From Haliotis cracherodii (Eukaryota), in the NCBI RefSeq assembly GCF_022045235.1, contig NW_027266308.1, forward strand, positions 62,186,001-62,250,000: 64,000 nucleotides of DNA, read 5' to 3'. The notes under the pieces were generated by a model. It saw only the letters and a list, made by a program, of their open reading frames with translations. It had not been told where the DNA came from and ran no database searches. Below, piece by piece: positions 1,801 to 25,300 of the stretch (positions are counted from its first letter, which is position 1; the number at the start of each line of letters is the position of its first letter). The position numbers were made by a program, and so were the translations under genes.

Positions 1801-2539
1801 GGCCTACATTTCCGAAAACAAACAAACAAAAACAACAACAAATAGTCAAATACATAATAGTGCCACACACATCTTACTGAATGAGAGAAAGAGACAAAGC
1901 TTTTTCAAACACAGTTTTTTCTGTTGTTTGTTTGATGTTTGACGCCGCACTCAACAATATTATTGTATAACCGTTTGCCATTTGATAGAAAAATCGTTCG
2001 TAAGAAATATAAACATTACAAATTCAATAATACAACTAGTGTCATCACCCACAGGTCTAACTGAAATTAGTCTAATTGTAAACACATTGAACACAATGTC
2101 CCTCAATACTACATATTACTGAGGCGTTGTCCTAATTTGATTTACTGCCTGGACTGGTTTGCATATTTGTTTTGTTTACTGCAGCACTCAGCAATATTCC
2201 AGCTAGATGACAGCGGTCTGTAAATAATCGAGTCAGGACCAGACTATCCAGTGATCGATGTCATGAACAACGGCCCACGCGGTCGAATCACGTGGACAAG
2301 CTATCTGCTAAATCACCGAGCGTGACCACGCACCTAACATGCGCCCGATCAGGCAAGTCGATTCGCATGACCAGAATATGTTTCTGGGGACCATTTGTAA
2401 CCTGCAATCACCAAATCGGGTCCTTGTTCAGGACTTATCCATCAAATAAATATTCACGGAGCAGTTGGAAAACATGCTGTCCTGGAATCCCTACGGGGGA
2501 AAAACAAATAAAGTGCTAGTTGTACATATTACAAGATTT

Positions 2540-2770
2540 TTGTTTGTTGTTTAACGCCGCAGTAAGCAATATTCAAGCTATATGACTGCGGTCTGTTAAT
2601 AATCGACTCTGGACCAGACAATCCAGTGATTGACATCATGAGCATTGATCCATGCAATTGGGATACGATGACATGCATCAATCAAGTCAGCGAGCCTGAC
2701 TACCCGAACCCGTTAGTCGCCTCTTACGACAAGCATAGACGCCTTTTACGGAAGGATGGGTTTGCTGAAG
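2540..2770 (-). mobile_element. SINE-like family B. Other copies: 2165-2340, 7055-7280, 9965-10147, 16357-16562, 43148-43292, 44187-44330, 46340-46593, 51045-51805
   Basis: Shared GTCGTAAGAGGCGACTAAC core and CTGGAATATTGCTGAGTGCGGCGTTAAAC(AAAC)n 3' end in many dispersed copies. Confidence 0.85.
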
Positions 2771-3713
2771 ACGCACGTATGTTTGATGGTGGATAAAAAT
2801 AAAACTTTTTTTTTTATACGGGTATATCATAGTTGTGTTGTGGACCTTGAAATGTTTTGGCGACTGTTTTCAGCCTAGTAACGTTTGGACAACGTTTGCA
2901 GTTTTGGGGGCAAATCCGAAGCTTATATATATACTTCCTTTCGCCAGCAGTTTCTTGTATTGTTTAGCCACCAGCGGGTATGACGTGGACAAATAATATC
3001 CCATATGTTAATCAAATGCTTATTTATCACATCCTCATGTGGTCGAACCAGCTGTGAACAATCTGAATTATCGGAATGCAACGATTAACCGCACGCTAGT
3101 TGCTAGCACAGTGTACAGCGACCCTAATGTGTAGTAATTACTAGTGTGCATAATAATTTATTACTTGTAGCGAATTTACTGTTAATGAGTACAGACGTGG
3201 ATGTGCATATGTTATCAGGAAATGGTAGGCTCTATTCTCCAATATAGTTGTGTTCCAGATACCTATTACTGTTAAACAGAAGCAATCCCCATAATTCCAG
3301 TCACGTTGTCAGCCATAATCCAAGTTATATACGACAGGGAAAACGTATCAAGTCTGACCGAGGTCACCGTTTTGGGACGTCGCGAGTCATGATAATAAAC
3401 TTGAAAATAGCCTTCAGCGAGCCAAGGAGACAACCCAATTAAACAATAATACCACAAAGAAGGCCCAATGTTGTTTTGCGCCGCGTTTGGTAATATCCTA
3501 GCCAAACCAAGGCTGGGGACACCAAGAATCGGCCTTACACATGGTTCATGTGCGGAAAGGGGCGGTCTGGTAGCCCAGTGGTTAAAGCGTTCGAAGTCAC
3601 GCTGAAGACCCGCGTTCTATTCCCGACATGGGTACAATGTGTAAAGCCCATTTCTGGTGTCCCCCTTCGTGATATTTCTGGAATATTGTTAAAAGCGGCG
3701 TAAAACACCTCCC

Positions 3714-3752
<39 letters not shown>

Positions 3753-6700
3753 TACATACATACATGCATACATACATCTTAACACAGTGCCTGACATCAT
3801 GAACCTATATACGCTTGACTCACCAAGATGCACGGATTCGCACACGAGTAAGTATGCTAGGGACAAATCACATTTTCTTTCTGAATCGAAAAGGTCAAAC
3901 GGGCATAGTACTTGAGCGTCATATACAGCAATAGTAGAACTAGGTCATGTTAATCATTTGGATCAGCTGTGATGTATAGCTGCTGGCTGTGACGATAAAC
4001 AACATTCAATCAGTTATGCATTTGGAACACGCCATGACATACAAAGAAATATACCTTCATGGCTCGATTTAATTAACCTGTTTTAACTTGCACCATCTGC
4101 ATGTTGACATAAAACCTACTTGCACTAGAAAAGAACAGGTTGCACCCTGTAAAAGTTGAAACATCCATACAGTTTGGTGACGTGTTCAGATTGATTTCGT
4201 GTGGACATGTAAGAGTTACACACAAATTGGAATGATTTTGACATGCGCTTGGTGCATGTAGATATAAATATAAGGGTCCGTTTTTCATTAAAGGGTTGCC
4301 CTTGTGCATGATTGATGTAGCTAAATCAAGCCAGGACCTTGGATATATATGAAACAACAAAGTAATTTCACTACTCTCCTCGATGATCCACTGTGTTTTT
4401 TTTAAATATATACTTCAGTGTGAAAGAGTGAGTTTTCAGAAGTTGAGAAAAGTGATATTTTCATTGCAGTGAACATAACATTTGATATTTCACTGCACTG
4501 AACATAACATGGACGGAACTATTGTCATACAAGAGTTACCTCCCCTTAAAATTGTCTCCCTTTGTCGTAAGTAACTAGTCCTTACGCAAACTGTTGACGT
4601 TCATATTACGTTAGGTCCACATTGACAAGGCAAAATAATGACAGATGGTCGTTTATGCAGTTAATATCATTCTTGCCGTTTTTTATTCTCTCGAAAATGT
4701 TTCCTTATAAACTGTAAATTTCTTCTCATTTAACTAGTCAATCGAGACTGTTCGTTTCGCAAAGCGCCATTTTTGTTACTTGACCAGCATGTATTCTTTC
4801 GCTTCCAACAGCTGCCTCCTAGTTTTCGAGAATATTTTTTGTTAAAGTTGATTTTGTTTATAATCATATCTGTATGATAAAGAATGTGTGTGCCCTTAAT
4901 ATTTTTTTATGCTTTTGTTTATATTTTTTAAGATTTTGCAAACGCGAAACTACTTTTAAAGTCGTAAACAAATGGTGGTGAATCGTCCCTGTATGTTAGG
5001 TAGTATAAATAAATATAGGGAGAATTTACGTTTCAAGGTTTTACATTAATGTAATGAAATAATTTCATTTTCTGCTAGACAACTACACAAAAAGTATATA
5101 ATAAATAGTACTCTCGGTCTTGCTTGACAGCGGTATAAGGATCTATACCGAAACGTCGCATTTACAGTAAAAGTTGTTATCCATAAATTGTGTCTACTTT
5201 GTAGTACTCTCACCAGAAACACGTACGTAGCATCTCGTTTGACTTCCCGCCACAAGCTGCGCTGTGACAAGGTATCTGATATACAGCGACTGTGTCACAG
5301 TGCTGCAACGTGAATCACAGAGACCCGACTGGCGCAGGACACGTGAAACCGAGTGGTAAGCTGTGGACTGTTTGGCATTATCATCGTACGCAGTGTGTAA
5401 CAATCCTTGTTTAAACTACAATCATGGCTTGGCTCCTTAAAAGTAAAGGCCAATTATCTATCTTAAAGCAAAATAAAACAACGTTTTCACGACATTTGAA
5501 GGTTCACCTATGACGAACCAGGTTTGTTCATTAACAACATATACAAGCTCTTTTTTGTAATCTCAAGGAAGTATAAATGAGTGAGTGAGTGAGTTGGGTT
5601 TAACGCCACTTTTAACAGTATTCCAGTTATATCACGGCGTGTCAGCTTAATGTGGGAGGAAAGCCCGAAGTGATGCAGGTCTCAGACGTTTACCACTCCG
5701 GTGAAACCCACGAGCACGGGTATGGTGCTGACAAACCTAGAAACATAATCGGGGCGAACCGGGATTCGAACCCACAATCATAGGTTTCTGGCGTGCCCAA
5801 GGGACGCAACTCTGCACAGCGAATCGCGTCGCCTCGGAAGACTTGGCCACCCATGCCCCCTAAGCATAAATGAAATTAGACATACGATGTTTTGTCTGTT
5901 GAACGTTTGTAGTAGCCAAGTGGTGTACAACGCCACGACTGTATTAAGCAGCCAGGTTCCATTGCAGGACCCCCCTCCCACTATCTTTTAATCCACCTCT
6001 GTGTTTGTAAGTATTCAACCCAATTGTGTTCCAACAATTCTGGATCTTGGAGACTGTCCCTATCGGAGCTGCACCAAAACCTACCGGAGCCCAGTTAGAT
6101 ATATTTGACATTGCTGGATTTAGGGGAGGGAGACAAATTCTTATTGTCAGCACATGCACGTTTGGCACGTCTGCAAGTTCTTGACATGGCGCATATTTTG
6201 CATCAACATGTACGTAATTCCCCGTCATGTCAGTTATCACCAAGCGTGTTCAGTAGACAGCCGCCGGAACCATATCCGAGGTGGCAGTATTATACAGCGA
6301 GCGTATCGTGTTGCCAAGTCTCTCCGGCCGTGTTTTATATACGTGTACTTTACGTATTGCGCATATGTGCATGTATTGTATTGAAATGTTTCAACCTTTA
6401 AAGTACAGCTGTGTATTCGACTGCGCTGCTTTCAGAATATTAATTGACCACCTTGTTGACCTTTCTTTAATCAACAATACTTTAAGGCATTTTCTTTGAG
6501 TTTTATTAGTTGTGGGGGCATTGGAAGCTTCTGGGTCACTCCAGTATGTTTTATGTAGTTCAGCTTACACAGCTTACACATGATTGGTCTAGTTCAAATT
6601 CTATTCTAGCGCTCAGCATTTTACCTGCACGCCAGCCATAACATCTTGACCATGTTCACGGACCACAGCCGTCCTCTGTATAGAAACTGTACCCTGTACC

Positions 6701-8265: not shown

Positions 8266-11200
8266 TCACTTGAAGATCTTTCCCTGGTTGAACTTCTTGC
8301 CATCAAAGTTGCCCTCCCAGGTGAAGTACTCCTGCACCAAAGTCTTCGTCTTGGCATCATCAGGGTTGAGCTTGGTCCACTTGTAGGACTCAAAGTCTAT
8401 CTGCCAGTCCTCACTCAGCTAAAACACAAAGCAGATATCGGGTCAAACTAGGGTTTGCAGCCATAGAAAGTAACCATTTTAGTCCACTCGTCCTTATAAT
8501 ATTAACATATAGCAAAAAACTTAATAATGGCAAATTTCTATTAGTCCTTATGATATCTGAACTATTGGGCAGAGCCAATTTCTAAGCTGGTTTGTTGCTT
8601 ATGCGGCACTTGGCAATATTCCCGTGGCATGTACATAATTAGGACCAGATTGATATCGTGAACGATCCATGCCACGACACCTAAGTCAGTCAGCCTATTC
8701 TGACCTGGAATCTCCACAGTCATTCAAAATAGGTAATCAAAACCCATGGTTATGAAAAGAAGACTACGGATAATTAACAAAATACAAGTCTTATAAGGTA
8801 TTTGACTGTTAAGGATACGTACATACATTTTGTTTGTTGTTTAATGCCACACAATAAAAAAAACACAACCCTGGCAGGGAAATGCTTGAAAAAAATTCAA
8901 TACTTAAAACAGTACCTAACATTTTTTTACCACATACATGCTTAAACATATGTCTTTATGTTCAGGTATGACCCGTGATGTCGAATTATATGATGTGACA
9001 TCATAGGGCCTAGTGCCATACACTTTGTGAGGATCCTTATACTGTATATGCATTCATGTTGGTACGCATTCTCACCACTATTTGTCAGCTGATTTTATGA
9101 CAAATCTTCATTTATATTGAGAGCAAACTATGGGTAATTAATGTTACATTTGTACTTGTAGGTATTTTTTCACATTTGATTTATGTGTATTTATTTCAAC
9201 AGGGCCTCATTAGGGGTTCACAGGGTTAATTTCTTCAAAATTTCAAAACAGCTGGCATCCAAACATCAACCGTGTTTGTGCAATTGTTTTCACAAAACCA
9301 CTCTGGTTACAGTGGCAAGAGAAGAATTCTCATATCCAACATTCCACATATGCTTACCTCAAAAGCCAGTTGAGGTCCTCTCCAGAACCAGATGCCAGAG
9401 ATACTGTTCGTATTGTCTCCACCAAATATAATCATACTTCCAAATGCATTTTTTCTCATCTTGTCAAGACGCTGGAACATGCCTGCAGATTCAGAATTGA
9501 CATCCACTTGACTAAAAATATTTCTATTGAGAGGAAATATACTGATGCTTTTCGGCACAAACCTGGCTCAAGCCAAAACTTATCATATGAAGTGCCAAAC
9601 CTTGGACTAATGCTGAAGCAAGGTGAGCCACAAAGTAGGGGTTGCCAAACACAGAAGCAGCCCTGTCACTGCTATTTCTCACAATGACCTCATAGATGTT
9701 GTAGGATTTGTTAACGTGCCTGTAGGATTTGTTAACATGCATGCCTGTAGGATTTGTTAACGTGCAATGCCTGTAGGATTTGTTAACGTGCAATGCCTGT
9801 AGGATTTGTTAACATGCCTGTAGGATTTGTTAACATGCATGCATGTAGGATTTGTAAACATGCATGCCTGTAGGATTTGTTAACATGCCTGTAGAATTTG
9901 TTAACATGCCTGTAGAAGTAACCATGCCTGAGATAATGAAAATGATATAACCATGAGCTGAAGTTTTTGTTTATGTTTAACGCCGCACTCAGCAATATTC
10001 CAGCTATATGACGGCGGTCTGTAAATAATAGAGTCTGGATCAGACAATCCAGTGATTGACATCATGAGCATCAATCCACGCAATAGTGATATGATGACAT
10101 GCATCAACCAAGTCAGCGAACCCGTTAATCGCCTCTTACGACAAGCTTGGGTAGCTGGAAATACCATAGGTTGCACAGAAAGAACTAGAGGTATTTCAAG
10201 CTCAAACAACCTTCATTACTAGATTTGCTTGTCGATTGTTCATTTCTTGCTACGTTACACGACCAAAAAGTATGCATGATACAAATGACATATTTGTCAG
10301 TGTTCAAATACGCACCTGAAACAAGATTGCACACCATAAAGGTTTTCTTAGAAGACAGGTCTTGTGTGTATTCACAATGCCAAATAGAGTACTTGTCCTT
10401 TTCAAACTTGTCCCAGAAGTATGGCAAAGCAACTTTGTCTGTGTCCTCATTGGAGTATGTTCTCTTGAATTCATCGAAGTCAAAGTTCCTGAATTAAAGA
10501 AAAGGATAAATCTTAAATTATATTTAATTTAACTTGGCATAGATTCAGTATCATGGCTTGATATGGAAACAGACACCATTACTGCAATAACATTATAGAA
10601 TTCTGACACAATGAGCGGTAGAATTGTATCTGAAATGATTATTTTATAAGAAATAATTTTTCCCAATATCAATAATCATGTTATTTTATTTGCAGCTTTA
10701 ATATAAATATATATTGTGCTTTACATATATATATATATAGTAATAATTAAATAAGTGGAGCAAGACTGAACACAGTTTTAATTGGCTAGCGCTTTCAACT
10801 CGTACCATGTATGAGTCATCAGGCCATAACTGAATAAATGAAGTAGTAACATAGTTACGTGACGTCATAACATTTAGGAGAACTATGACGTCACAATACC
10901 AAGGTGACAATGGACAAATAACTTACGCCTTTACATTTAACTTAGGCGCGTATTTATGAATGAAATGCTCTTTTTGAAACAATGTAGGTTCATGATCAAA
11001 ATTTAGTTTATATAGCGGGAAAACTAAAAAGTTGCCGCTTCCACATGTATCTTAATGTTCACTGAGTGGAATCGTCGGTTGTGTGGCTGCTTTATTTATG
11101 ACAGTGAAGATTCATTCTTCTTTTTAATTTAAGTTCTGTCTTTCCGATATACTTTTCATGAACTTTTCAGTTCCCATATACTTTTCATGAAAAGTTCATG

Positions 11201-14200
11201 AAAAGTATATCGGAAAGACAGAACATATATATATATATACATATGTGAAATATATATGTTAAATGAATTACCATGAGCGTAGCACTTTGGTACAGCTGAT
11301 ACCTATTGCCGGATACTTTTTCGTATGGAAGAATTTGACCAATCACCATCTATGCGCCCGTGATTGCGAAAACCTTTTACTGACATATAATAGTCAAACT
11401 ACAACAAATATGACTTTCAGCGAGTCAATGTATGGCTTTTATGATATATCCTCTCTCTATCCACTTAAGTTCGTTTCAAGGCATCAATAGTGCTAAAATG
11501 ACCTTGGTTGCTGTAAATAACAGTGTTTTGCGATCTTCTGATCGCTTCACATACGATTTTGCCGAAATGAATTGAAACAATATTGAATGTGATTTGGAAT
11601 AAAAATATTAAAAAAGATTACAAACATAAGTGCCGATATAAAATGAACTCTTTTTACAACCAGACAGTGTAAACACATGATTAATTTGTGTACTTCCGTA
11701 CGGATTTGTTGACATGGCATTTCCGGTGTTACATGCTCACAGTAATGTCATTTTATTGGGGAAAAATACTTCTCTTGAAAGCCCCCTAATTCTAGTTACG
11801 AAAAATTTGTCTTATATGCAGCAATATACGGATTTGGATTCCTACCAGTTTGTAATCAACACACCCCTCCCTCCAATAAAAGCTGCCCACCCGCCCGCAC
11901 AATATTCTCATACGCCCTTACCTGAGAACCAATTCTTTTATTTTTTTAAGCCTTAGTAAAACAATTTCTAACATTGATAATATGTGAACATTTTGGTGCA
12001 ATGAAATCCCAATTGCATGAGATTAGAGCTATGGTCATGTTGGATGGTTTAGGAGTCCAGTCACAAATACTAGTGATGGACACTCGGCCAACCAATTATT
12101 ATATCCTCTTTAAACTCACAAGACCAACAGTGAAAGAGCAAGTCTCACAGAGGAATCCTAGACAAGGTAGAAAAGTTTTTCATTATGAAAGTAACAGTTG
12201 TTGTCAGGACAGTAGGACTTTCAGACTATGAGAGTGAAAGGTTTTCCTACAGCTTAAAATGGCACGGCATACCAAGAATAAGCTTCACATTGTACTAACA
12301 TGAGAAATAACCTTAGGCGTGGCGAGCCAATGTATCAATCACTAGGTTAGGTTTCAATGACCCCAGACAAACAGTTTCAATGTAAACAAAAGAATGGCAT
12401 TGAGGACAGTTTACATAAAACAGAAATGGGTCTCACCCTTTGGGGAACTGTGCAAAGGGGTCTTTCTTCTCAGGTCTTGGTGCCTCCTCTGCCTGGAAAT
12501 TCAAATGAATATCAAATTTAATGTGGTCGAATTCCATTTCATGAAAGCTTATTCTAACAATATGTTAATAAATGTCAATCTTTGCCCAAAAATAACTAGT
12601 GAAAATATAAAAAATAAGAATTTTCTACTTTCCTGAAGGACAGCAGATAATGGGGCAGATAGTCAAGTGCTTAATATTTACTCAGCTTATGTTTGTAGTT
12701 TTGAGATAACACTCATTTTACAGTATACCTTCTCTCTTTCAAAAACTTATAATTGATTCATGTAATCCAAGTCATGTGACAAACCTCAGCAGGCTTTTCC
12801 TCCTTGGGTTTCTGGGCCGGCTTGGCTTCCTTCTTGCTCTCCTTCTTGCTGTCCTTCTTGCCGTCCTTCTGCCCTCCGTGAAGGTCTGCATACTTCTTGG
12901 CTAAAGGAATGACAAGGCTTGAAATTGGTGGTAGGAAGTAGAAAACATATATTTAACTTTTAAAAAATGTCTCAATTAATTGATCAAATTACCTTGGGGT
13001 GTATGAGCAATTGGGTTTAACACCACTTTGATGATTATTCCAGTTATATCGCGGCATGTCAGCTTAATGTGGGAGGAAAACCCTAAGTGACACAGGTCTC
13101 AAGACGTTTACCACTTTGGTCAGACCCACAAACACGGGTATGGTGCTGACAAACCTAAAAACATAACTGTCAGCATCTTCCTCAAGTGCATTAGACCCGT
13201 GAAGATTCAGGGTAGAAATTACGGATCATCACGGGTGCTGGTACCATGAGTGTGTGGGTATGGTTTTACTCGCTATTCCAGCAATATCATGGCGGGGGAC
13301 ACCAGAAATGGGCTTCACACATTGTACCCATGTCGGGAATCGAACCAGGGTCTTCGGCATGATGAGCTAATGCTTTAAGCACTAGGCTACCCGACGGGCC
13401 CCTGGTGCTATGAAATCCCACTGGCATGAGATAAGGTTTATGGTCATGTTGGAAGGTTTAGGATTCCAGTCACAAATACTAGTGATGGAAACTCGGCCAA
13501 CCAATTATTATATCCTCTTTAAACTCACAAGACCAACAGTGAAAGAGCAAGTCTCACAGAGGAATCCCAGATGACGTGCATTGCCGTAACACCTCGGATA
13601 ACAGCTAATTTCAGGTGACCTCAAAGACTTATCTACTTTTTGCCATACCGTAAAATGTTATTGTTTAAAAACATTGTTGTTCGTCAAATATTCTGTTTGA
13701 TCATGATAATATTAAATCAGTTTCCCTTAGTGATGATCATGATTTTCATAACAAATGTCCTTATTCCAAATGAAGACATTTATTTTCATTTCCAATTTAT
13801 TAACAGTAGAGCAAAATTGAAATGTTATCAATAAAAGCCCCAAGACAGATAGGTAAAGGGGAGCACCGGTCAATATACATACCATCAAACTGAGCCATCT
13901 TGGTGCAGAGTGCGAAGTTCTTGACGACTGCCTTGAACTCCTTCTGGTTGATCAGTGTTGTGAACCACCGATTGACATTGGGGAAGGACTTGCGGAAGTC
14001 AGGGTCCAACACCTACACGACACAGTACAGTACAGAGAGATGCACTATATTTCATAAATTATTGCCACTTTTCATAGTAACAATTTTCTAACAATGATAA
14101 TATATAACATTTGAACATGGTGTTATGAAATCCCACTGGCATGAGATAAGGCTTATGGTCATGTTGGATGGTTTAGGATTCCGGTCACAAATACTAGTGA

Positions 14201-17200
14201 TGGAAACTCGGCCAACCAATTATTATATCCTCTTTAAACTCGCAAGACCAACAGTGAAAGAACAAGTCTCACAGAGGAATCCTAGATGACGTGCATTGCA
14301 GTAACACCTTGGATAACAGCTGATTAGTGACATACAGATCTTATCAATCTGAGCAGCTTCTATTCAGGTGAACCAGCAATGAAAGAGCAAGTCCCACAGA
14401 GGAACATCCTACATTGAAGCTACAACTCTTTCAAACGTAGCTACATGCACTAGACAACTTTCCTTTATAATTGTTTCCAAACAACCTTCCATGATGGTGT
14501 ACAGTCAACCAGTCTGTACATGCATGGTGTACCCTCAACCACATTTAACCACCAATCACTGTCTTGGTTAGCTCTAGTCTTTAAAGTGAGTGAGTGAGTT
14601 GGGTTTAACGCCGATTTCAACAGTATTCCAGTCATATCACGGCGTGTCAGCTTAATGTGGGAGGAAAACCCGAAGTGATGCAGGTCTCAGACGTTTACCA
14701 CTTCGGTGAAACCCACGAGCACGGGTATGGTGCTGACAAACCTAGAAACATAATTGGGGCGAACCGGGATTCGAACCCACAATCATAGGTTTCTGGCATG
14801 CCTAAGGGACGCAACTCTGCACAGCGAATCGCGGCGCCTTAGACGACTGGGCCACCCATGCCCCTCTAGTCTTTAAAAGCTCCACGGTGCACTCACATAT
14901 TGGTAGAGCTGGATGAGGTTGCAGGCGACGCTGATGTCAGCCTGGGAGATCCTCTCACCGACGAGGTATGTGCGAGTCAGAAGAACATTGTTCAACACTT
15001 CAAGGGCTGTGCGGATCTGCTCCTTTGCTCTCTCTGTGTCCTGGCAAGAGATGTTGCATTTGATTACAATAACAACAACCATAAAAAGGAAACAATATGA
15101 TAGAGTAAGTTGGCAACAAACATTCTTTCATGAATTATACATCTCTTACCAAGAAAATAGTTTCTCTTTTCATGTTTCCAACACAGAATGGTGTACATTT
15201 CACCACAAACAAAAAAGCAAGGGACTTAACTCAATAGGAAGACAACAAAAAGTCAAGTCCCCTTGCTTAGTCTTATTACAATATCCTAGTTTTGCAGTTA
15301 TAATGTGCAAATTCAGATCTTAGGAAAAAAAGGAGAGCACCCACTCTGCAGAAGGGGACTGGTCCACCACCCACCTGTTTGTTGTACTGAACAATGCCGA
15401 GACAAGGGAATACCCAGGTACAAGCGGCTGGAAGGATCTCATTGTCTGCAAAGCAGGTCCACTGCTGCACCTGGGCGGCGGCCTCGGGGCTGCTCCCTCT
15501 CAGCTGGTTGTTACCCACTGAAACATGGAACACACACAATCATGCTTTTCGTCCAAAATCTATTCATGCTTAAGGCAACACAGTTGGCAATGAAATGTAG
15601 TCAAGCGGGTTGTTACAAATGCAATAACCTCAGAATGGTCACATCCAACTAGTCACCGGCTATTTGCAGACTTGTGGTTTATGTAAAGTACTGTAAATCG
15701 TGAAATTAATGCGTCTTCAAAAGAATGTGACCACTGGCCCCTTGCCAAAAATGTGACTCAATTATGTCAATATGAATGTAACACCCCCCTCCTCTCAAGC
15801 ATCAGTGGATTTCTATCTAAAGAAAATGTCCTCTGTCAGGTTTAAAGGAGAATCCACACATTAATCCAATCATACACCAAATAGCACCACTTATTAGGGC
15901 TGAGTAGAGTACTTCCACTAATACAATACATGCGTGCTGGCTCGTGTCGGCCTTTGACGCAGTCGTAATGACACCTAAGATCTTATTAGCATTAATAATA
16001 AAATGTATTGGTTATCATGGTTATGTTTTCACAGGTTTATATCAGAAAAACACTTCATATTATGTATAGATAAATCCGGCTACTAATAAAACCAGTTGGT
16101 GCTACAGGTTTTTCACTTGGGAGCCAAATGGCACCCAAGGGAAAAAGTTAACCAAGAAGGCTTGTCATGAAAGATACTTACCATATTGAGCAATAGCATT
16201 GCTCTCAAACAAGTTTAATCCATTCTTTGACTGGAATGCTGGGACCTGGAAAAACAAGGTTGACAGAATATGAAAACATTTGTAAGCAGCTGTAAAACAA
16301 TAACACGAAAGGTTGCCACATGCCTGGAGTGGTAGTGGCTATGATTTAAAAAAAATGTTTGTTTGTTATTTATTGCAGTCTGCAAATAATCATTCTGAAC
16401 CAGACAATCCAGTGATTAACTTCATGAGCATCGATCCACGCAATTAAGATGATGACCTGCATTAACCAAGTCAGCGAGCTGGACCACCCGATCCCGTTAG
16501 TCGCCTTTTACTGCAAGAATGGGTTGTTGAAGACCTATTTAACCCCAGATCTTCTCACGGGTTTAACAAATGTACCGGTAGTGCAATCAACATTTTACAT
16601 GTTATGTAACACAGGTGCTTCTGCTGGATACAGATAGTATGCTGTGCAATCTAATATGTAATATAACCATTTGCCCATTTGATAGAAAAATAGTTCATTA
16701 CAAATTTAAAAAATAAAACTAATTTCATGACCCACAGGTGATTTGAAGTTGGTCTAATTGTACACACATTGAACATGTTGAACACAATGTCCCTTAATAC
16801 TACAAATTACTAAGGCTTTGTCCTAATATGATTTACTGCCTGGACTGGTTTGTAGGAGAAATGTTATGCAAACAGTTGACACTACACCTTCGCAGCCAAT
16901 TTCATGATGCAGTGTTAGACAGGCAAGAATATGATTATATATAGTTACAAGAACCTTCAAATCCTGCTAATCTCTTTATGTTCCTCCAGGTCTTACACTT
17001 GGGTCACAGAAGTACACAAGTGCCTTTGAAGGAGGGTGTTTCGTGGCTGACTCAGGCTAAATACTCATGCAACTGTCACGTAATACCACCTACATAATAC
17101 CATGGTTAGAAACAAACAGTTTTTGTCCACTAGTCCTTATAATGATAACATATAGCAAAACCCTTAAAATGGGCCAATTTCTACTAGTCCTTAGGATACC

Positions 17201-19246
17201 TTTACTATTGGGCAGTTTGGTAAGGACTACAGGACTAGTGCCAATTTCTTACGCTGAATACAACTGAACTGTCAGTCATTTCACCAGCAGAGGGTGGAGC
17301 TTGCTACCAGTTGTGGGCCAGTCAACAGTTTGGTCTTAAGTGTACATAAAATAGTTTGCATGTCTGTCCTTTTCCGTACTACCCAGTAAACACAGGTTAT
17401 TTCTTTGTTAATCTTTCCATTCCAACCTTTTAGCATTGTATAAAATAATATCAAGATAAATATACATTTCTTATCAATTCATGCACCATAACACTAAGGT
17501 TAAGTGGGGTTCTAAAAAAGATGAAGCCATTAAATAAATTTGTCTGATAATCATAATAAAGTGTCCTTGTGTCAGTGCACAAACAAACGATATCAACACA
17601 AGTTCCTAGTTGACTATCACTAAAGTCATCATGATCTTTAATGTTTTGAATTGACTAGAGAAAAACTATGCATTGTTATTAATATAAATCAGACATGTTG
17701 ATGTTGGACCCATCAGCTTCCTGCGAGCAGCAGCTGGCAAGGTATGACACGTCCTCCAGTATATATCCTCCAGCACTTACATTCACATCACAAACGTACA
17801 TGAATGCCTTTGTAGAGGAATATTAACATGCAGGAAAAACAGAAGGCACTTGTCTGAAATAGTCCTCCCACGTCTACGAGGTTAAACATATTCTAATAGT
17901 TGACAGTTTGCCCAGATACTCTATATATACAGGATATAATTTATGGGCAAGAGTTAAAAAACACAAACTCTAGTAAGCTGTATCTGCCTTTAACCCGTCA
18001 TCAGCAAGACCTTATTTTCAATTAATTGGATAATGAAAACAACTGTCCAAAATTCAAACATGTTAGAAAAAGCACTACAAAAATACAATATTTCCAAATA
18101 AACTTCCTTTAATATTGTTTAACAACTATCAATGAACAAAAAGAAATAGACCAACTTCAACTTGGCAGGTCTTAGTGCGTCGGTAGCATTCTAGTTGAGT
18201 TTCATAAAATCCTGTCATCTTTGTACTCTCACAAACGTGCAAATGTTAATTGTGTTGATCAGGGTATTGATGGTTAAGTCCAAAGTGTGTCGTTTCCCTG
18301 GGCTGTCCTGTATATGAATAGAGACAAGTCACTAGAGTGGCCGTGTGTTGTAATAACTTTCCTCTGCACCATGTGTAATCATTTACCGTATTGTGAAATG
18401 CTGAACATACATCTTGACACTGTGTCCCTAAATACCATAATTAATGACTGACTGGACTATTTTAGTACTCATATATTCAAAGTACTGTAGGAGAAATATT
18501 GTTAGACTGGCAAGAATATGGTTACATGTTGTCAAGAACCTTCAAATCCTGCTAATCTCTTTTTGTTCCTCCATGTCTTACACTTGTGTCACAGAAGTAC
18601 ACGAGTGCCTTTGAAGGAGGGTGTAACTTTATTATGTTGTACTTTGTCCCCCTCACCACCCAGATATATGTTGATTACCAACTGATCACTATTAACACAT
18701 CCTCTCACGATTTCCATTTGACCAAAACTGACCAAAGAATGGCATGGGTGTCTATCATCAAGTGAAGGACAACCGTTGCCGGTACAATTTCTTTATTTCA
18801 TTTGCCTGTCGAACGTGCTGTGGACAGTGGACAGTTGACTAACCCCAAATGTCAGGTTACTTCCAATTCCTGGTCCTCGGATAGTAGTGACCGTATCAAG
18901 TCTGACTGGTAGTCTGTATCCTTAGTTATCACGAGATTGTGCATTTTCATACCTTTCCCAGTGGGAACTTGCTAAGAAAGTCGCTGGATTTATTTGTTTC
19001 TCCGAGTTTAAACCCGTCGGCAACTTTCACGTCAGCACCACTGTACTGAGCGGCTACAAGAATCTTGTAGGCTCTGAAGTTTCCTGCGTATGTGTATAGA
19101 GTCTGGAATGAAAATAAAGATATTTAATGGAAAAGTCACTATTCGAGAGTATAATTTTACTTCAAACCAAGCGCAAAACTCGCAGATTATCGAGATTTCA
19201 GACTGATTGAGCTCGTGAAAAGCAGAAGACTCACGCCGGCCGCCAT
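8266..19246 (-). CDS. EEF1G: Eukaryotic translation elongation factor 1-gamma (eEF1B-gamma), 11 coding exons, ~421 aa
   Basis: Exons: 19235-19246 (MAAG), 18953-19102 ([22 protein letters not shown]...FPLGK), 16182-16245 (VPAFQ...[10 protein letters not shown]), 15375-15517, 14897-15040, 13883-14012 ([14 protein letters not shown]), 12785-12900 (Lys-rich linker), 12437-12492 (KDPFAQFPK), 10316-10488 ([13 protein letters not shown]), 9358-9482 (GMFQRLDK...GIWFWRG), 8266-8418 ([12 protein letters not shown]...NQGKIFK*). All introns GT-AG with consistent phase. GST-like N-terminus plus EF1G C-domain. AATAAA at 8185-8190. Confidence 0.98.
9699..9915. repeat. 21-25-bp minisatellite in EEF1G intron 9
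   Basis: About 9 copies of CCTGTAGGATTTGTTAACATG. Confidence 0.9.
10783..10826 (-). ncRNA. Minimal type I hammerhead ribozyme-like motif (Penelope-like element remnant)
   Basis: TGGC-CTGATGA-CTCATACATGGTACGAGTT-GAAA-GCGC-TA-GCCA: stem I, core, stem II, palindromic loop III and UA cleavage site. The base of stem II is imperfect. Confidence 0.65.
12035..12157 (-). ncRNA. Candidate box H/ACA snoRNA family A, copy in EEF1G intron 8
   Basis: Same fold. Compensatory change TTCC/GGAA to GTCC/GGAC in the upper stem of the 3' hairpin. Confidence 0.8.
13444..13566 (-). ncRNA. Candidate box H/ACA snoRNA family A, copy in EEF1G intron 6
   Basis: Near-identical to the intron 5 copy; H and ACA boxes intact. 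Confidence 0.8.
14159..14281 (-). ncRNA. Candidate box H/ACA snoRNA family A, copy in EEF1G intron 5
   Basis: Sense strand of host: hairpin (ATTCCTCT...AGAGGAT), H box ATAATA/ATATAA, hairpin (TTGGTTGG...CCATCCAA), ACA+3 nt. Conserved in three different introns. Confidence 0.8.
14586..14864 (-). mobile_element. tRNA-Leu-like SINE family C (~280 bp). Other copies: 5577-5860, 47043-47308, 44370-44590; partial 13005-13165, 36427-36660
   Basis: GTGGCCCAGTCGTCTAAGGCG A-box region, GGTTCGAATCC B box, (ACTC)n tail, 13-bp TSD TCTAGTCTTTAAA. Confidence 0.88.
16910..17037 (-). ncRNA. Candidate box H/ACA snoRNA family B (SNORA25-like guide), copy 1 in EEF1G intron 2
   Basis: CCTCC-TTCAAAG-stem-AAGAC-GGAGG hairpin, H box ACATAA, second hairpin, ACA+3 nt. 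Confidence 0.72.
17699..17821 (-). ncRNA. Divergent H/ACA-like RNA sharing the family B 5' pocket
   Basis: TCCTCT-ACAAAGG-stem-TAAG..GGAGGA hairpin and a second hairpin GGAC...GTCC followed by ACA. The hinge ATATATAC is not a canonical ANANNA. Confidence 0.4.
18497..18624 (-). ncRNA. Candidate box H/ACA snoRNA family B, copy 2 in EEF1G intron 2
   Basis: Paralogue of 16910-17037 with H box ACAAAA and ACA+3 nt. Differences fall mostly in loops and upper stems. Confidence 0.72.
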
Positions 19247-19389: not shown

Positions 19390-22300
19390 ATGGTACGTAT
19401 ATGCATATATTTTCCCGATTGAGCGTAGCGTTCGAATGAGTAGTGATTCTAATGTTTTTATTTAATACCATACCGACTGGGAAAAGCGAAATCATATCAA
19501 GAGCCGGTCGAATACAGTTTGGATAATGGATCGTGAATGCAGTTCTCTTTGCTGCCAATGGGCAGTAGTCAATGCCATAAGCATCTGTGGTACTATCATA
19601 TACTATGGAATATTTGAGATTATCGGTTTGATCTTTATTACGTGGTAGCATATTAATATGAGAATTAATAACTCCCATGTGCTACACAGAACCAATATGA
19701 TGTCCGACACAGGTTTTATTCCGACACAATTAGCACTAGTCTAGTGGGAGCTCATTTAGCCTCTAGCCTACATGTTCAAGTCTGCTTGTGATCGTATCTT
19801 CAGTTTCTGTTAAACAAATGGCAGGGGACACAATCGACCAAGAACAAGTCTTGATAATACTAGCTCCACCTGAGTATCACAATACTGTCGATTTATTCCC
19901 AGGGTTTTGTAGAAATTCACTCGAAAATGTGTATTTATTTGTCAGTGATGCTCATTATATTACATGTCTATAGTGGACCTAAACATATATTAGTCTAATT
20001 ATAACTCTTCTTTGTGTCCTGAAGGTATATTTGTAATTTATCTCATTGAAATGCATTAAATATCACTGTTGAACTCCTTAAATTGACTCAAATACAGTGT
20101 GGCTAATTGATGAAACTTTTAACAAATGTCAAGCATTAAAATAATGATATTTTAAAATTGTTGATTTTTCTTTACAATCTCTCTTACCGCAGCAGGTAAT
20201 GCTACGAAAATCTCTGCCTTCACATTGACATGAAAACATTGCTGAGAATAAGTAGGAACAGGGTATTATATGGACACAGAAAAAATTGAACTGAAGAGAT
20301 ATGGACAATTACTTCTTTTGATATAGTGTACAATGATTATGCACTTAATTAAACAACTTTCCTTGAATTGGGATTCTCATTATGTCCTGGTTCAAACACA
20401 CCTTCCCATCGGACATAATCTTTCTTTAATGTGGTGCCAGTGATATGGAAAAATGTAGAACATAATGTAAACCATGCAGTCTAGGATGAAACATGAATCA
20501 TCATTATAATAATTTTCTGGTTCTTTTTCAGGGAAATGAAAACAGTTTGCCAATGGAGCTTTGCTCCAACTGTAAGTATATTCAGTGAAGTGTCGGAACG
20601 AAATATGTTTTTCACTTCTGCAATACATTGCCACAGGATTGGTTCCTGCATCCGACATATGCCAAAGGTCTAAGAGCATAGCTCAGTCTACAGTTTTTCA
20701 GGGTTACTCGTGATGAAGGAATTCTGCATATATGACACAAATTCCTTCCTAAATACTCCTTATTACATTTTCAGCGAGTTATTTGAAGCAACATATTTTA
20801 TCTGTCAGTACAACTTCAGTCAAACACAACCAGTCTGCGACTTCAGCCAATGCTGCGAAGCCTGAGTGTAGTTAAATTTTTTTCAGTCTGTTAATGGTCT
20901 AATAATAACATAAAACAATGCTTTAAGCTAAGTTTGAGCTACTGGACTCAAAAGATGGCACAGACTGCTCATCAAATGGTCTGTAATAGAAATTGTTTTA
21001 GTTATAACATCCTTTATAACATTCATCGTACGGTGGGGTAGCCTAGTGGTTAAAGGGTTCGCCTGTCACATCTGATGACCCAGGTTTGATTCCCCACATG
21101 GGTACAATGTGTGAACACATGGTGAAGCCCATTTCTGGTGTCCCCCAATATTACTGGAATATTGCTAAACACAGCATAAAACCATATTTACTCACTATAA
21201 CATTCATCAGATTTTAAGTTTTCGTTGATATCTTATGAGGTAAAATTCTGAACTCAAGCAAGACTCTCTAAGGTGTGCTGTTGACTGTCAAGTTATGCAT
21301 AGGCTAGTTTAAAGTTGAATCCCAGGGCGTTTTCTAGTGTTTACAGTATTTCTAAGCTGTGTATACTTTCATATTACCTTAATTTGGTTTGATAAATGAA
21401 ATGATTTTCCAGAGTAAGGTGAGTAATGGCCTCTTGCACTTATGACTATTGGATAGCAACTCTCTATGGTCTCCATGTGGTATTTATCATGCAATAAAAC
21501 AGATTAATTAAACACTGTACTGCACTGTTGTATGCATATGTTATTGCTACAATACAGATTTGTCTGTTTGCAAGTTGCAATTCAGGCCAGGAGATTGAAG
21601 TTAGGAAAGTGTATTTGGTCTACTAAATGATGTTCCCCTTAGAATAGGGTTCACCACTAATTGATATGCATGAATGCAGCTTTGAAAATACATATCATTT
21701 ATCTCTGTGACTAAATTCCAGATTAGATAGCTCCCTAGCAGTAGTAACTGACAGATAGGTGACCATGATTCGGTAGTCAGACTCAGTGACTTGGTTGGCC
21801 ATCATGCCCCGGTGGTGTGGATTGTTGTTCACAATCAATCACTCAGTTATCTTGTGTAAGACATGATTATTTACAGGCAGTCGTCTATAAGCTGAAATAT
21901 TGCTGAGTGATCTTGGAGATCAATACTGTATTTCAAAATCCCATAGGGGGCATTCGGTAGCCTACTGGGTAAGCCCTTTTCTTTGTGTGACCCCCCGTGA
22001 TTTTGCTGGAATATTGCTTAAAGCAGCGTAAAACCATACACACTCACTCACAATCCCATAGGGATAGCCTTCATGCTGATTATGCAAAATATGTGTCACA
22101 ACTGACACCATGTTACCTTTGGTTTGGTTGTGTCATCTCCCTACAGTTGACCTGGACGAAATCAAGAGGCTTGGAAAGCGCTTCCGCAAGCTTGACTTGG
22201 ACAATTCCGGATCTTTGAGCGTGGAGGAGTTCATGTCCCTACCGGAGTTGCAGCAAAACCCACTGGTGCAGAGAGTTATAGATATATTTGACACTGATGG

Positions 22301-25300
22301 AAATGGGGAGGTAGATTTTAAAGGTACAGTGATATTGAGTAACAGACTGTCGATAGGTCTTTCAACAACTGCTTCATCTACAGCTACAAGTGGGGATCTA
22401 GGTTAGAGTAGGTCCCCAGCACACCATTGCTGGTTGTATTATGAGGCAATGTGAGTACTTGTGTGCCATATTGCATGGATTGTTGCACATGCTTTCATGC
22501 ACTGGATTGCCTGGTCCAGACTTTACAAGCAGCAGTGATATAGCTTTACTATTGCTGACTGAGATGTGAAAAACTTTCATTGACTCACCCACACGTGCAG
22601 CTATTTAGCTTACCAGTAACAAAAGTTCATGCCCGGACCTAGAGGTATTCCAGCATTGACTTTGTTCTGATTATGAGCAAACATCCTCCATCTTCCCGAA
22701 GCAATGGAGTTACCTGACAATAAAAGTCCAGTTTCCACCCTTGCCAAACTATTTTGACTGGACATAGTCCATTAACGAAATCAGCACCTGGTTCATTAAC
22801 AGCTGTGAAATTTCGCTCTATTGCAGGATTTGCAAAGCATGTGTTCTGTCAATAAATATTTTCCAAATCTTTTCATGTTTTTAATCAAGGTGATCACATG
22901 ATTTGATACACTTCGTAAAGTAAAAAGTTTTGTTACATTATAGATCTTGATTATTGAACAGATCATCTTCGCTAGGCACTGTCATTTTGTTTGAAGCAAA
23001 TGCAAGTGATATGAGTGTTGGAATCTGATTGGTAAATAGGAGGGACATAGAAGGGACATAATTGGTAATAGCCTATGGTGGTGCTACCATTGAGACCAGA
23101 AATTCCAGCCTAGTTTGGCAAGGGTGGAAACTGGAGTTTTTCAGTCAGTTAACCCCTTTGCCTCTGGAAGGCACAGTTACCACAATCGACTTTAGATATG
23201 TCAACTTCTGTGCTTTGGCATACAGCATGACACAATTTCTAAAAAGTTGTAATTTGAAAATCATATGATCAATGTTAATGATTGGTTGAAGTAAACTCAA
23301 TAAGACTCGGACCATTTGTTAAATCCCAATACAAATAAGTCCTAACTGATCACTGTTTTTTATCCCAAATGATAATTGCAGAAAATCAGTTAATCATCCA
23401 TTTGTTTCATTTCCAGAATTCATCGAAGGTATTTCACAGTTCAGTGTTCGTGGCGACAAGGAGTCCAAGTTAAGATGTATGTGTAAGCATTTTACCTAGA
23501 TGTTCAAGACGACATCATCATGATCACCCCCACCTACTCCCACTAAGCAGTTAACACCTCTTTCCTCATCTGCTACGGCAGATCAGTGACGTACTCTCTG
23601 TGGCTAATCTCATCAGGCAGCGAGGCTGCTGCCCCAGGGCTGTATCTAGGATTCCCCCCAGGATCCCCCCTAACACACTCACACACGTCATCCAGGATGA
23701 TCATTCGCTGCGTCTAACAGTCCTTGGGTAATGGAGGACTAGTGTGACTTTAGTGGCATCTTACCATAGCACAACTCTGCAGTTCAGTGTGGTTTCTTGA
23801 CATATAAATTTGATAACTCTGTGTTTATGGAGCTCTTTATACTCACATTATGCTTCTCTGCAAGTCAGAGCTTGTAAAGTTTTTAAAGAATGATGTTTTA
23901 TGATGATTATACAATGCTTGTTATGTTTCTCTATGATTTTCTTTATTGTTATATGTTATATTTAATTGTAACTGTAAATTTGAAAAGTACAAGAGCTCTG
24001 ATGGTAGTTTTTATCAATAACTGTACAAGTACTAGAGTCGCTAGGGTTAGACAGTGAAATGTGTGGGGAATGATTCAGCACGAAGCGCATGTTATGAGGA
24101 GCAAGATAGGAGAAGGTAACTATGTTCCGGGATGCTGCTGTCCTCACACACATGCTTCATCCTGTCATTCCCCCATGTTGCCCATAGATGCTAAAAAGTG
24201 ACAGGATCTGGGCCCAACTTGCCCAGTATCTTGTCCTTCGAAACCCAAACTGAATCCTAGATACAGCTCTGACAAAAAGGTGTGTGAACTGAAATCAGAA
24301 GGGTATGGTTTTTGTTCATTAGAAATGTGATTAAATGAATTAATGCATCTATAGGATCAGGTAAGAGTTTTAATTAAAGTTCAAAATTTGCATGTTTGTG
24401 CATACATTTTGACCCATCTTTTTACTCTGAAATTTCAAGGTTACCATTTCCAATGCATACAGTGTTATGTGAACTCTGTGACACTCCTTCACTGGACTGC
24501 ACCCTTGTCTCTAGCTTTTGTGCACGCATCTTGCACTCAGAGCCACCTCCCACCCTTTGTATTGAACTGATGATGTTTAACAGTTATTTGCCAGGGAATG
24601 GTCAAATATGAGGCATTGAGTGATTCATGTATGTTTTAACATGCTAAAAACGTTTTAAAATCTCTTGTGAGGAATTGCTGCAAGTTTGGTTCACTTGCTA
24701 TGTGATGGGCCCTTTATGTGACAAATGTCAATGAACTGGTTGGAGACCTAAATGCTTGGGCAGTGAAGGAAGGTATAGCTCGTGTGTGAGCACTGTCACA
24801 GATGTTATATCTGTTAACACATGCTGGGAGAAAAGGAACTATTTCTTTGTTTAGGCCTGTTGGCTAATGTCAGTTGTCAGGTTACATATGACATTTTCTT
24901 TATTTTCATGTTCCTGCTCTTTAAGATATGGTAGTTTTTTTGGTATTTCATTATGTAAATTATTTTCTTGGGTATTACATTGATGATGATTAATTTTTTT
25001 TTGTGTATTTCATTTAAGTTAAATTGCATTTCATTATCATTCTAATTTTTTGTGGGAATGATATCTGAAACCTTTACATCCGATTAGTTTTTCCAAGTTT
25101 CTTCTTACTCTCTATCGACTTACCTTGGTTTTTTTACAGCCTGTTATCACTCATACTAATTACATATGCTGTAAATCTTGAAATTAATGGGTCTCCAAAT
25201 TAACACGAATGCTGACACCTAGCCAAAATGCGGCTCAATACCAATGCGACTCCCCCACCCCATCCCCAGTGGAATGATACATATCCTTCCTTAATCCAAT

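What the first reader, a model, noticed from the sequence alone, without database searches (positions are those of the whole stretch)
12035..14281. Triplicated intronic H/ACA snoRNA in EEF1G that appears to guide pseudouridylation near the 5' end of 5.8S rRNA
Seen: a ~123-nt block recurs once each in introns 5, 6 and 8 on the host sense strand, as hairpin - H box - hairpin - ACA+3. The intron 8 copy has a compensatory pair change (TTCC/GGAA to GTCC/GGAC), which is direct evidence for selection on the fold. The 3' pocket arms GCCGAGU and UCC are invariant, and the 3' arm starts 14 nt before ACA. Established: this is canonical H/ACA geometry, and metazoan 5.8S rRNA contains GGUGGAUCACUCGGC. Inference: the pocket pairs as GGA-[U]C-ACUCGGC (3+7 bp) and targets that U. 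As I recall, this site is not among the human 5.8S Psi sites but corresponds to a modified position in plants (needs checking). It could be an undescribed invertebrate guide family amplified by intron-to-intron duplication.
Basis: partly seen in the sequence, partly recalled or inferred. Interest (0 to 1): 0.8.

Follow-up and report, generated by a model that had tools for sequence, protein, structure and literature searches.

The report
Three intronic H/ACA snoRNA copies
Three introns of a translation-factor gene each carry a copy of a small guide RNA of an ordinary kind, and its guide sequence best fits one uridine near the start of 5.8S ribosomal RNA, a site so far reported as modified only in plants.

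Summary
Three 124-nt units lie on the minus (host sense) strand at 12035-12158, 13444-13567 and 14159-14282, in three introns of an EF-1-gamma gene. Each folds as hairpin, AUAUAA hinge, hairpin, ACA.

They are the only copies found in the 1.18-Gb genome, by BLAST and by covariance model. They are 96-98% alike, against 71-85% in the 3' flank.

The 3' pocket fits this species' own 5.8S rRNA at U17: 10 Watson-Crick pairs in 12 contiguous, 14 nt from ACA. It is the best of 1673 uridines in rRNAs, spacers and U1-U6; the next best has 7. Shuffled arms reach this in 40 of 3000 trials.

No Rfam family matches.

Not shown here:
- a stable RNA (only low-depth RNA contigs);
- the pseudouridine itself;
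- conservation in other species.

Structure support is thin: one compensatory pair, two one-sided changes that keep pairing, two that break pairs.

Verdict: most likely a real, undescribed H/ACA snoRNA in three paralogues, a new member of a known kind, with a plausible 5.8S target.

The scan holds notes on further H/ACA candidates in this gene and genome.

The parts
12035..12158 (-). snoRNA copy A (intron 8), 124 nt; carries the G-C version of pair 78/104
   Evidence: covariance model 159.8 bits
13444..13567 (-). snoRNA copy B (intron 6), 124 nt; A-to-U at position 114 breaks one lower-stem pair
   Evidence: 157.3 bits
14159..14282 (-). snoRNA copy C (intron 5), 124 nt; positions 21 and 41 changed with pairing kept, position 100 breaks one pair
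   Evidence: 157.1 bits; RNA contig of run X2 over 14110-14288
13508..13513 (-). H box AUAUAA in the hinge of copy B (positions 55-60; same in all copies)
13491..13496 (-). 5' arm of the 3' pocket, CCGAGU (positions 72-77), pairs with 5.8S 19-24; G71 and G70 can extend it
13457..13463 (-). 3' arm of the 3' pocket, UCCUAAA (positions 105-111); UCCU pairs with 5.8S 13-16; starts 14 nt before ACA
13447..13449 (-). ACA box of copy B (positions 119-121), followed by UGA
14372..14404 (-). truncated fourth piece: 33 columns matching only the rising strand and loop of the 5' hairpin (at least 30 of 33 alike to each full copy), no H or ACA box; a dead fragment
   Evidence: not found by the covariance model at E up to 10
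13883..14012 (-). host exon 6 of EF-1-gamma, between the introns of copies C and B
   Evidence: spliced contigs and joints; ORF translation
12784..12900 (-). host exon 7
   Evidence: joints 12491>12784 and 12900>13883
12436..12491 (-). host exon 8, upstream of the intron that holds copy A
   Evidence: contig piece and loose end at 12436

Best explanation
These are three paralogous genes for one box H/ACA small nucleolar RNA of about 124 nt. One copy sits in each of introns 5, 6 and 8 of the EF-1-gamma gene, on the sense strand. Inferred from how animal intronic snoRNAs are made: each is cut out of the spliced intron, trimmed by exonucleases to the edges of the dyskerin-type protein complex that binds the two hairpins and the H and ACA boxes, and so accumulates.

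The internal loop of the 3' hairpin pairs with 5.8S rRNA on both sides of U17, counted from the start of the Rfam 5.8S model. UCCU pairs with 5.8S 13-16 and (GG)CCGAGU pairs with 5.8S 19-26. This leaves U17 and C18 unpaired at the foot of the upper stem, 14 nt from ACA, where the synthase would turn U17 into pseudouridine. U17 lies in the single-stranded joint between two predicted 5.8S-28S helices.

The 5' hairpin has no open pocket and probably only serves assembly. The copies arose by intron-to-intron duplication of a unit of about 175-210 nt and were kept alike in the RNA body only.

Shown: sequence, fold, boxes, copy number, conservation pattern, best target. Inferred: processing, accumulation, the modification itself.
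For: Fold and boxes. Two hairpins, AUAUAA hinge and ACA directly after the 3' hairpin in 3 of 3 copies. 98% of 99 pair cells are standard pairs, against 29-51% when partners are slid by 1 to 3 columns either way.

Structure-keeping changes. One compensatory pair and two one-sided changes that keep pairing. P(at least one compensatory pair from 6 random substitutions) = 0.0096.

Copy number. Only 3 copies in 1.18 Gb, all in this gene and in the same orientation.

Conservation. The RNA body is 119-121 of 124 alike. The 48-nt 3' flank is 34-41 of 48 alike, and the 45-nt 5' flank is 20-39 of 45 alike. Fisher P for the body against the 3' flank is 1.3e-6, 1.4e-5 and 0.012.

Host. EF-1-gamma is spliced and abundant in RNA contigs, depth 500-765. 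The same gene holds three more H/ACA-like units in an upstream intron, SNORA38-like at E 1e-4 to 1e-3.

Target. 5.8S U17 gives 10 Watson-Crick pairs in 12 contiguous. The next best of 1673 uridines gives 7. Only 40 of 3000 shuffled and 52 of 3000 random arm sets do as well. The 3' arm starts 14 nt before ACA.

RNA contigs. Low-depth contigs cover the blocks (X2 14110-14288; X1 14124-14235 and 11968-12231). Intron bins 12248-12421, 12509-12769 and 14336-14500 have no depth.

Literature. A pseudouridine in the bulge between helices 2 and 3 of 5.8S is confirmed in Arabidopsis (passages). A site 5.8S-18 is predicted for several unrelated fungal families (passages).
Against: - No RNA ends were seen. 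One intron contig (X1 13541-13894) runs into the exon, so it is pre-mRNA. Words shared by three copies get triple depth in an assembly, which by itself could explain contigs only over the blocks.
- The small-RNA runs gave no test. X20 laid 0 reads. X21 laid 16, mostly on a SINE, with depth 0.14-0.36 over the copies.
- Fold energies are not significantly below shuffles: z -1.4 to -1.8, with 5-18 of 200 shuffles as good.
- The tool's column-shuffle control for covariation is not significant, 173 of 500.
- Two of the six variable columns break a pair.
- One side of the guide has only 3 Watson-Crick pairs plus one G-U.
- The target match has P about 0.015 for one pocket, and there are two hairpins.
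- No Rfam family reaches its threshold; the best is TtnuHACA22 at 25 bits against 90, E 0.9.
- No orthologue from another species could be fetched.
Confidence: 0.6

Rival explanations
1. It is a real H/ACA snoRNA, but the 5.8S match is a coincidence. The RNA would guide another site or another RNA that I did not scan, or it would be an orphan or have a chaperone-type role.
For: The match has P about 0.013-0.017 per pocket, so it is not overwhelming. One arm gives only 3 Watson-Crick pairs plus one G-U. Invariant arms are uninformative when only 6 columns vary (P 0.27). I scanned only rRNAs, the two internal spacers and U1, U2, U4, U5 and U6, not the external spacers, minor snRNAs, tRNAs or mRNAs.
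Against: 5.8S U17 beats the runner-up by 3 Watson-Crick pairs among 1673 uridines. The 14-nt spacing is canonical. A site in the same kind of junction of 5.8S is a confirmed target in a plant, and a site numbered 5.8S-18 is a predicted target in fungi.
Confidence: 0.22
2. It is not a functional RNA. A piece of intron was copied between introns and kept alike by gene conversion, and the hairpins and boxes are chance features.
For: Fold energies are not significant. There are only three sequences, and the covariation control is 173 of 500. No RNA ends were seen. Another agent's note on this genome reads a similar intron duplicate as gene conversion (s1-829578; I did not test it).
Against: High identity stops within about 6-8 nt of the predicted RNA ends on both sides, while the flanks are 15-29% diverged or unalignable. 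H box, ACA, pocket spacing and a strong rRNA match occur together. One compensatory pair and two pair-keeping changes have P about 0.01. The setting is a multi-snoRNA host gene.
Confidence: 0.12
3. It is a dispersed repeat or SINE fragment that happens to lie in three introns.
For: True SINE-like repeats lie next to it, at 13031-13378 and 14599-14756. They show very high depth in RNA contigs and a weak tRNA match.
Against: BLAST and the covariance model find 3 copies in the whole genome, all here. In the model search only 150 of 14903 first-look candidates were scored. The depth over the blocks is 3-6, not thousands.
Confidence: 0.02
4. It is a Cajal-body guide RNA (scaRNA) for a spliceosomal snRNA.
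For: It has the same two-hairpin H/ACA build.
Against: The terminal loops CUGU and UAGUAUUU hold no UGAG-type CAB box (motif recalled). No site in U1, U2, U4, U5 or U6 is among the eight best listed, which run from 10 down to 6 Watson-Crick pairs.
Confidence: 0.03

Closest known systems
Animal intronic box H/ACA snoRNAs in translation-machinery host genes, including cases with several isoforms in different introns of one host (recalled from the Drosophila snoRNA literature, not checked here)
   Same: Two hairpins, H and ACA boxes, a pocket 14 nt from ACA, sense strand, one unit per intron. The host gene is highly expressed and codes for a translation factor.
   Different: No sequence or structure match to any of the 4227 Rfam families at threshold. 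In the searches I ran I found no paper describing snoRNAs hosted in EEF1G or H/ACA snoRNAs of molluscs.
The Arabidopsis H/ACA guide for 5.8S Psi22. The site is predicted and confirmed, and it is called plant specific (PMC8351944 and PMC6793436, passages only).
   Same: The target is a uridine near the 5' end of 5.8S, in the bulge between helices 2 and 3. Here U17 lies between the predicted 5.8S-28S duplexes 3-12/412-421 and 21-31/333-344.
   Different: I did not align the two 5.8S sequences, so identity of the position is not shown. Plant snoRNAs are mostly not in single introns of protein genes (recalled).
Fungal H/ACA families predicted to target 5.8S-18 (PMC5824354, passages only)
   Same: A pseudouridine is predicted at about the same distance from the 5' end of 5.8S, by several unrelated guide families. 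This suggests repeated independent aiming at the site.
   Different: The paper says there is no experimental evidence. Its numbering is its own, and the details are in a closed supplement. That this is the same uridine is my recollection of the yeast numbering, not a test.
Xenopus SNORA10, said to target 5.8S instead of 28S (PMC6984369, passages only)
   Same: An animal H/ACA snoRNA with a predicted 5.8S target that human lacks.
   Different: The position is given only in a figure and supplement that I could not see. No Rfam match of these copies to the SNORA10 family was listed at E up to 10.
Rfam TtnuHACA22 (Tetrahymena), the best Rfam match
   Same: Overall H/ACA layout, aligned end to end.
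   Different: 20.6-25.2 bits against a gathering score of 90, E 0.9-8.9. This is a resemblance of class, not membership.

Membership tests
Box H/ACA snoRNA (eukaryotic two-hairpin type) | Hairpin-hinge-hairpin-tail fold | tested here: met
   The minimum-energy fold of 3 of 3 copies gives it. 98% of pair cells are standard pairs. The energy z-scores are only -1.4 to -1.8.
Box H/ACA snoRNA (eukaryotic two-hairpin type) | H box ANANNA in the single-stranded hinge | tested here: met
   AUAUAA at positions 55-60, with AUAAUA at 57-62 also fitting. It is invariant in 3 of 3 copies.
Box H/ACA snoRNA (eukaryotic two-hairpin type) | ACA three nucleotides before the mature 3' end | tested here: inconclusive
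   ACA at 119-121 directly follows the 3' hairpin. The 3' end of the RNA was not mapped, because the contigs and the few small-RNA reads show no ends.
Box H/ACA snoRNA (eukaryotic two-hairpin type) | Pocket with two-sided complementarity that leaves the target U and the next base unpaired, 14-16 nt from the box | tested here: met
   3' hairpin: 4+8 contiguous pairs (10 Watson-Crick) around 5.8S U17, 14 nt from ACA. In the 5' hairpin the fold shows no open pocket, so it is a single-guide RNA.
Box H/ACA snoRNA (eukaryotic two-hairpin type) | Sense-strand intronic position in a polymerase II host gene (animals) | tested here: met
   The host is on the minus strand, and exons and GT..AG joints are confirmed by spliced RNA contigs.
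Box H/ACA snoRNA (eukaryotic two-hairpin type) | Accumulates as a discrete RNA of about 120-140 nt bound by dyskerin, Nop10, Nhp2 and Gar1 | tested here: inconclusive
   Low-depth RNA contigs lie over the blocks but not over other intron parts. This is confounded by pre-mRNA and by three-fold word depth. Protein binding is not testable here.
Box H/ACA snoRNA (eukaryotic two-hairpin type) | Target uridine is pseudouridine in vivo | not testable with these tools
   No modification data for this animal.
Any described Rfam snoRNA family | Score at or above the family's gathering threshold | tested here: not met
   0 matches in the window at gathering. The best below threshold is TtnuHACA22, 25.2 bits against 90.
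scaRNA | CAB box (UGAG type, recalled) in terminal loops; snRNA target | tested here: not met
   The loops CUGU and UAGUAUUU lack it. No snRNA site is among the eight best listed, which run from 10 down to 6 Watson-Crick pairs.
Dispersed repeat / SINE | Many copies spread over the genome | tested here: not met
   3 copies, all in this gene.
Guides of the plant 5.8S Psi22 / fungal 5.8S-18 site | Same rRNA position targeted | tested here: inconclusive
   U17 lies between two predicted 5.8S-28S helices. The review places Psi22 between helices 2 and 3.

The most novel reading that the evidence does not exclude
This guide would install, in an animal, the counterpart of a 5.8S pseudouridine that a review calls plant specific. 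The site sits at the joint between the first two 5.8S-28S helices. With several unrelated fungal families predicted for a site at about the same place, unrelated guide RNAs would have been recruited again and again to one uridine in three kingdoms. That would point to a recurrent benefit of this modification, or of guide binding itself, at the step where 5.8S pairs with 28S. The guide covers 5.8S 19-26, which overlaps one strand of the predicted 5.8S-28S helix (21-31).
Probability: 0.4. Interest if true: 0.45.

Novelty: new member of a known kind. Interest (0 to 1): 0.32.

Why it matters
Mollusc snoRNAs are almost unannotated. Rfam found nothing at threshold in this 64-kb window, although this one gene seems to hold six H/ACA units of two families.

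The unit gives a concrete prediction that is cheap to test: a pseudouridine at U17 of 5.8S in this animal. If it is found, the label 'plant specific' for that site would fall. The site would then become an example of convergent guide evolution onto one rRNA position.

In itself the object is an ordinary intronic snoRNA family with local duplication.

Tried and rejected
Dispersed repeat. Rejected: 3 copies by BLAST and by covariance model.

Known Rfam family. Rejected.

Coding. The plus-strand 54-aa ORF over the block has no word-sharing relative, so there is no support for coding.

Guide function of the 5' hairpin. The fold shows an 8-bp stem where a pocket would have to be, and the small loops lie 19-21 nt from the H box by my count. 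I ran no target scan for it.

Third hairpin. A hairpin in the conserved 3' flank (AUCUCA...UGGGAU, invariant stem, two loop differences) is seen in the alignment. By my own hand count, the chance that the 8 variable flank columns miss its 12 stem positions is about 0.045. I left it unexplained.

Orthologues. Three attempts gave nothing:
- a word search with the 43-aa exon 6 peptide, where the length window excludes full-length EF-1-gamma;
- a word search with the antisense ORF;
- an exact 25-mer scan of the metagenome contigs.
The big representative search was not used.

Expression. The small-RNA runs gave no usable signal.

Literature. I found no paper on EEF1G-hosted or mollusc H/ACA snoRNAs in the searches. 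Closed supplements may bear on the target claim:
- PMC8351944 Table S1;
- PMC5824354 section S21;
- PMC6984369 supplementary table 1 and Fig. 4B;
- the Drosophila preprint's Table S3, which holds 16 calls in 5.8S.

Full report
WHAT IS THERE. The repeat finder gives one family of three direct copies at 11994-12201, 13403-13610 and 14118-14325. On the minus strand the three align without gaps over a core. I trimmed this core to 124 nt: A 12035-12158, B 13444-13567, C 14159-14282. Copies B and C also share about 45 nt upstream. All three share about 41-48 nt downstream. A fourth, truncated piece at 14372-14404 (minus) matches only the rising strand and loop of the first hairpin, at least 30 of 33 columns to each full copy. 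It has no boxes.

HOST GENE. Exon ORFs on the minus strand hit GST_N, GST_C and twice the EF1G domain. Contigs of runs X1 and X2 join 12491 to 12784 and 12900 to 13883 with CT..AC on the plus strand, which is GT..AG on the minus strand, at depth 500-765. These runs are therefore RNA, and the gene is spliced as read. The exon that starts with the TLYTY motif has a splice acceptor just before it. I did not find that first exon.

FOLD AND BOXES. Each copy folds on its own into two hairpins, with a hinge reading AUAUAAUAA and with ACA followed by UGA after the second hairpin. In 124-nt numbering:
- stems 5-10/50-55, 14-21/40-47 and 26-28/33-35;
- H box 55-60;
- stems 64-71/112-119 and 78-86/95-104;
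- pocket arms 72-77 and 105-111;
- ACA 119-121.
The energies are only 1.4-1.8 sd better than dinucleotide shuffles. This is common for snoRNAs but is no support by itself.

VARIATION. Six of the 124 columns vary.
- Positions 78 and 104 change together in copy A, U-A to G-C.
- Positions 21 and 41 change in copy C and keep their pairs (C-G to U-G, G-U to G-C).
- Position 100 in C and position 114 in B each break a pair.
The tool's column-shuffle control is not significant (173 of 500), as expected with three rows. In my simulation, 6 random substitutions give at least one compensatory pair in 0.96% of 200000 trials. No substitution falls in the 24 arm and box positions, but that happens by chance in 27% of trials.

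BODY AGAINST FLANKS. The stronger signal is the contrast between body and flanks.
- Body: 121, 119 and 120 of 124 alike.
- 3' flank: 34, 34 and 41 of 48 alike.
- 5' flank: 20, 23 and 39 of 45 alike.
Fisher P is 1.3e-6, 1.4e-5 and 0.012 for the body against the 3' flank. Identity drops within a few nucleotides of the predicted RNA ends. This fits selection on the RNA. Gene conversion limited to the body is the alternative.

NOT A REPEAT, NOT A KNOWN FAMILY. BLAST of a 136-nt frame finds 3 places in the 1.18-Gb assembly, all here. A covariance model of the three copies (R1, 33 pairs) finds the same 3 in the window and in the genome. In that genome search 150 of 14903 first-look candidates were scored. 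Rfam gives nothing at gathering in the whole window. At E up to 10 it gives only a Tetrahymena H/ACA family at 20.6-25.2 bits against a threshold of 90.

TARGET. I took this genome's own rDNA unit: 18S 1810-3668, 5.8S 3972-4125 and 28S 4428-8144 of L008. I also took U1, U2, U4, U5 and U6. For every uridine I counted contiguous pairs outward from the pocket top on both sides.
- Among 1673 uridines, spacers ITS1 and ITS2 included, 5.8S U17 is first with 4+8 pairs, 10 of them Watson-Crick. With the strict pocket alone it has 4+6 pairs, 9 Watson-Crick.
- The next best site has 7 Watson-Crick pairs (first run on 1366 uridines).
- With the arms shuffled, a best hit of 10 or more Watson-Crick pairs came up in 40 of 3000 trials. 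With random arms it came up in 52 of 3000 (on the 1366-uridine set).
- The 3' arm starts 14 nt before ACA.
The 5.8S reads GGGGGAUCACUCGGC here. RNAduplex puts 5.8S 3-12 on 28S 412-421 and 5.8S 21-31 on 28S 333-344. U17 thus sits in the joint between two intermolecular helices. The guide also covers part of one helix strand.

EXPRESSION. No listed run holding the stretch was on record as RNA, but X1 and X2 are RNA by their spliced contigs. In them, low-depth contigs (2.8-5.7) lie over the blocks: X2 14110-14288; X1 14124-14235, 11968-12111 and 12082-12231. Intron bins 12248-12421, 12509-12769 and 14336-14500 are empty. Against reading this as a stable RNA:
- X1 13541-13894 runs from copy B's 5' end into exon 6, so it is pre-mRNA.
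- The contigs extend about 50 nt past ACA.
- Contig ends are not RNA ends.
- Words shared by three copies reach an assembler's threshold more easily.
The two miRNA-type raw-read runs gave 0 and 16 reads, mostly on the SINE at 13292-13378, so they are no test.
Between the window and X1's contigs I count 1 difference in about 228 nt of RNA body and 11 substitutions plus 3 indels in about 490 nt of flank. This is a hand count from tables 3, 4 and 8, at depth under 5. It is suggestive only.

LITERATURE (passages seen by the find mode only).
- A review of Arabidopsis rRNA modification states that the predicted 5.8S U22 pseudouridine was confirmed, that Psi22 is plant specific, and that one 5.8S modification lies in the bulge between helices 2 and 3 (PMC8351944).
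- The mapping paper reports 1 of 1 predicted 5.8S sites found (PMC6793436).
- The fungal snoRNAome paper names a predicted pseudouridine at 5.8S-18, targeted by several distinct families, without experimental evidence (PMC5824354).
- Xenopus SNORA10 is said to target 5.8S, with the position only in a figure (PMC6984369).
- A Drosophila preprint reproducible sites in 5.8S, with positions in a closed table.
- The zebrafish papers mention eef1g only as a promoter example, or not at all.
That human 5.8S has its two pseudouridines further in, and that yeast U18 stands in the same context, is my recollection and not a test.

CONTEXT. The same gene holds three further H/ACA-like units in an upstream intron at 16910-17036, 17699-17820 and 18497-18621 (minus). 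They are SNORA38-like at E 1.5e-4 to 9.5e-4, below gathering. Another agent's note calls this genome an abalone's (s1-829578); I did not test that.

VERDICT. This is most likely a real, so far undescribed box H/ACA snoRNA present as three paralogues. I put that at about 0.8. Its single pocket is aimed at U17 of 5.8S; I put snoRNA and target together at about 0.6. It is a new member of a known kind. Its interest lies in the predicted animal counterpart of a 5.8S pseudouridine known from plants.

Noticed in passing
window 16910-17036, 17699-17820, 18497-18621 (minus): A second H/ACA-like unit in three copies inside one upstream EF-1-gamma intron. It is SNORA38-like at E 1.5e-4 to 9.5e-4, 34-37 bits against a gathering score of 60. 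Two of the copies share a 92-nt repeat at 96%. This is the subject of the scan's note s1-832159.
   Followed up: partly
window 13413-13430 (minus), and the same place after copies A and C: A 6-bp hairpin (AUCUCA, 6-nt loop, UGGGAU) lies 14-31 nt after ACA+3. The stem is invariant and there are two loop differences between copies. Its meaning is unknown; it may be only part of the duplicated flank.
   Followed up: partly
window 13031-13378 and 14599-14756; also 11900-11986: SINE-like dispersed repeats. They show two-copy direct repeats at 86-90%, a weak tRNA match at 13332-13390, and word depth of up to about 735000 in RNA contigs. One sits between copy B and its 3' splice site.
   Followed up: no
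window 11134-11223: A hairpin that hits several miRNA precursor families on both strands, all below gathering (best mir-5014, 50.7 bits against 101). It looks like an inverted repeat rather than a known miRNA.
   Followed up: no
window 22110-22406 (plus): An ORF with EF-hand motifs of the calcineurin-B type, the neighbouring gene on the other strand.
   Followed up: no
G000 contig C34 about 17.60-17.68 Mb; C6 about 9.32-9.35 Mb; C5 about 19.01-19.09 Mb: snRNA genes stand in long tandem arrays. U4 and U6 alternate in one unit of about 1487 bp. U1 repeats every 565 bp. U2 repeats every 1164 bp.
   Followed up: no
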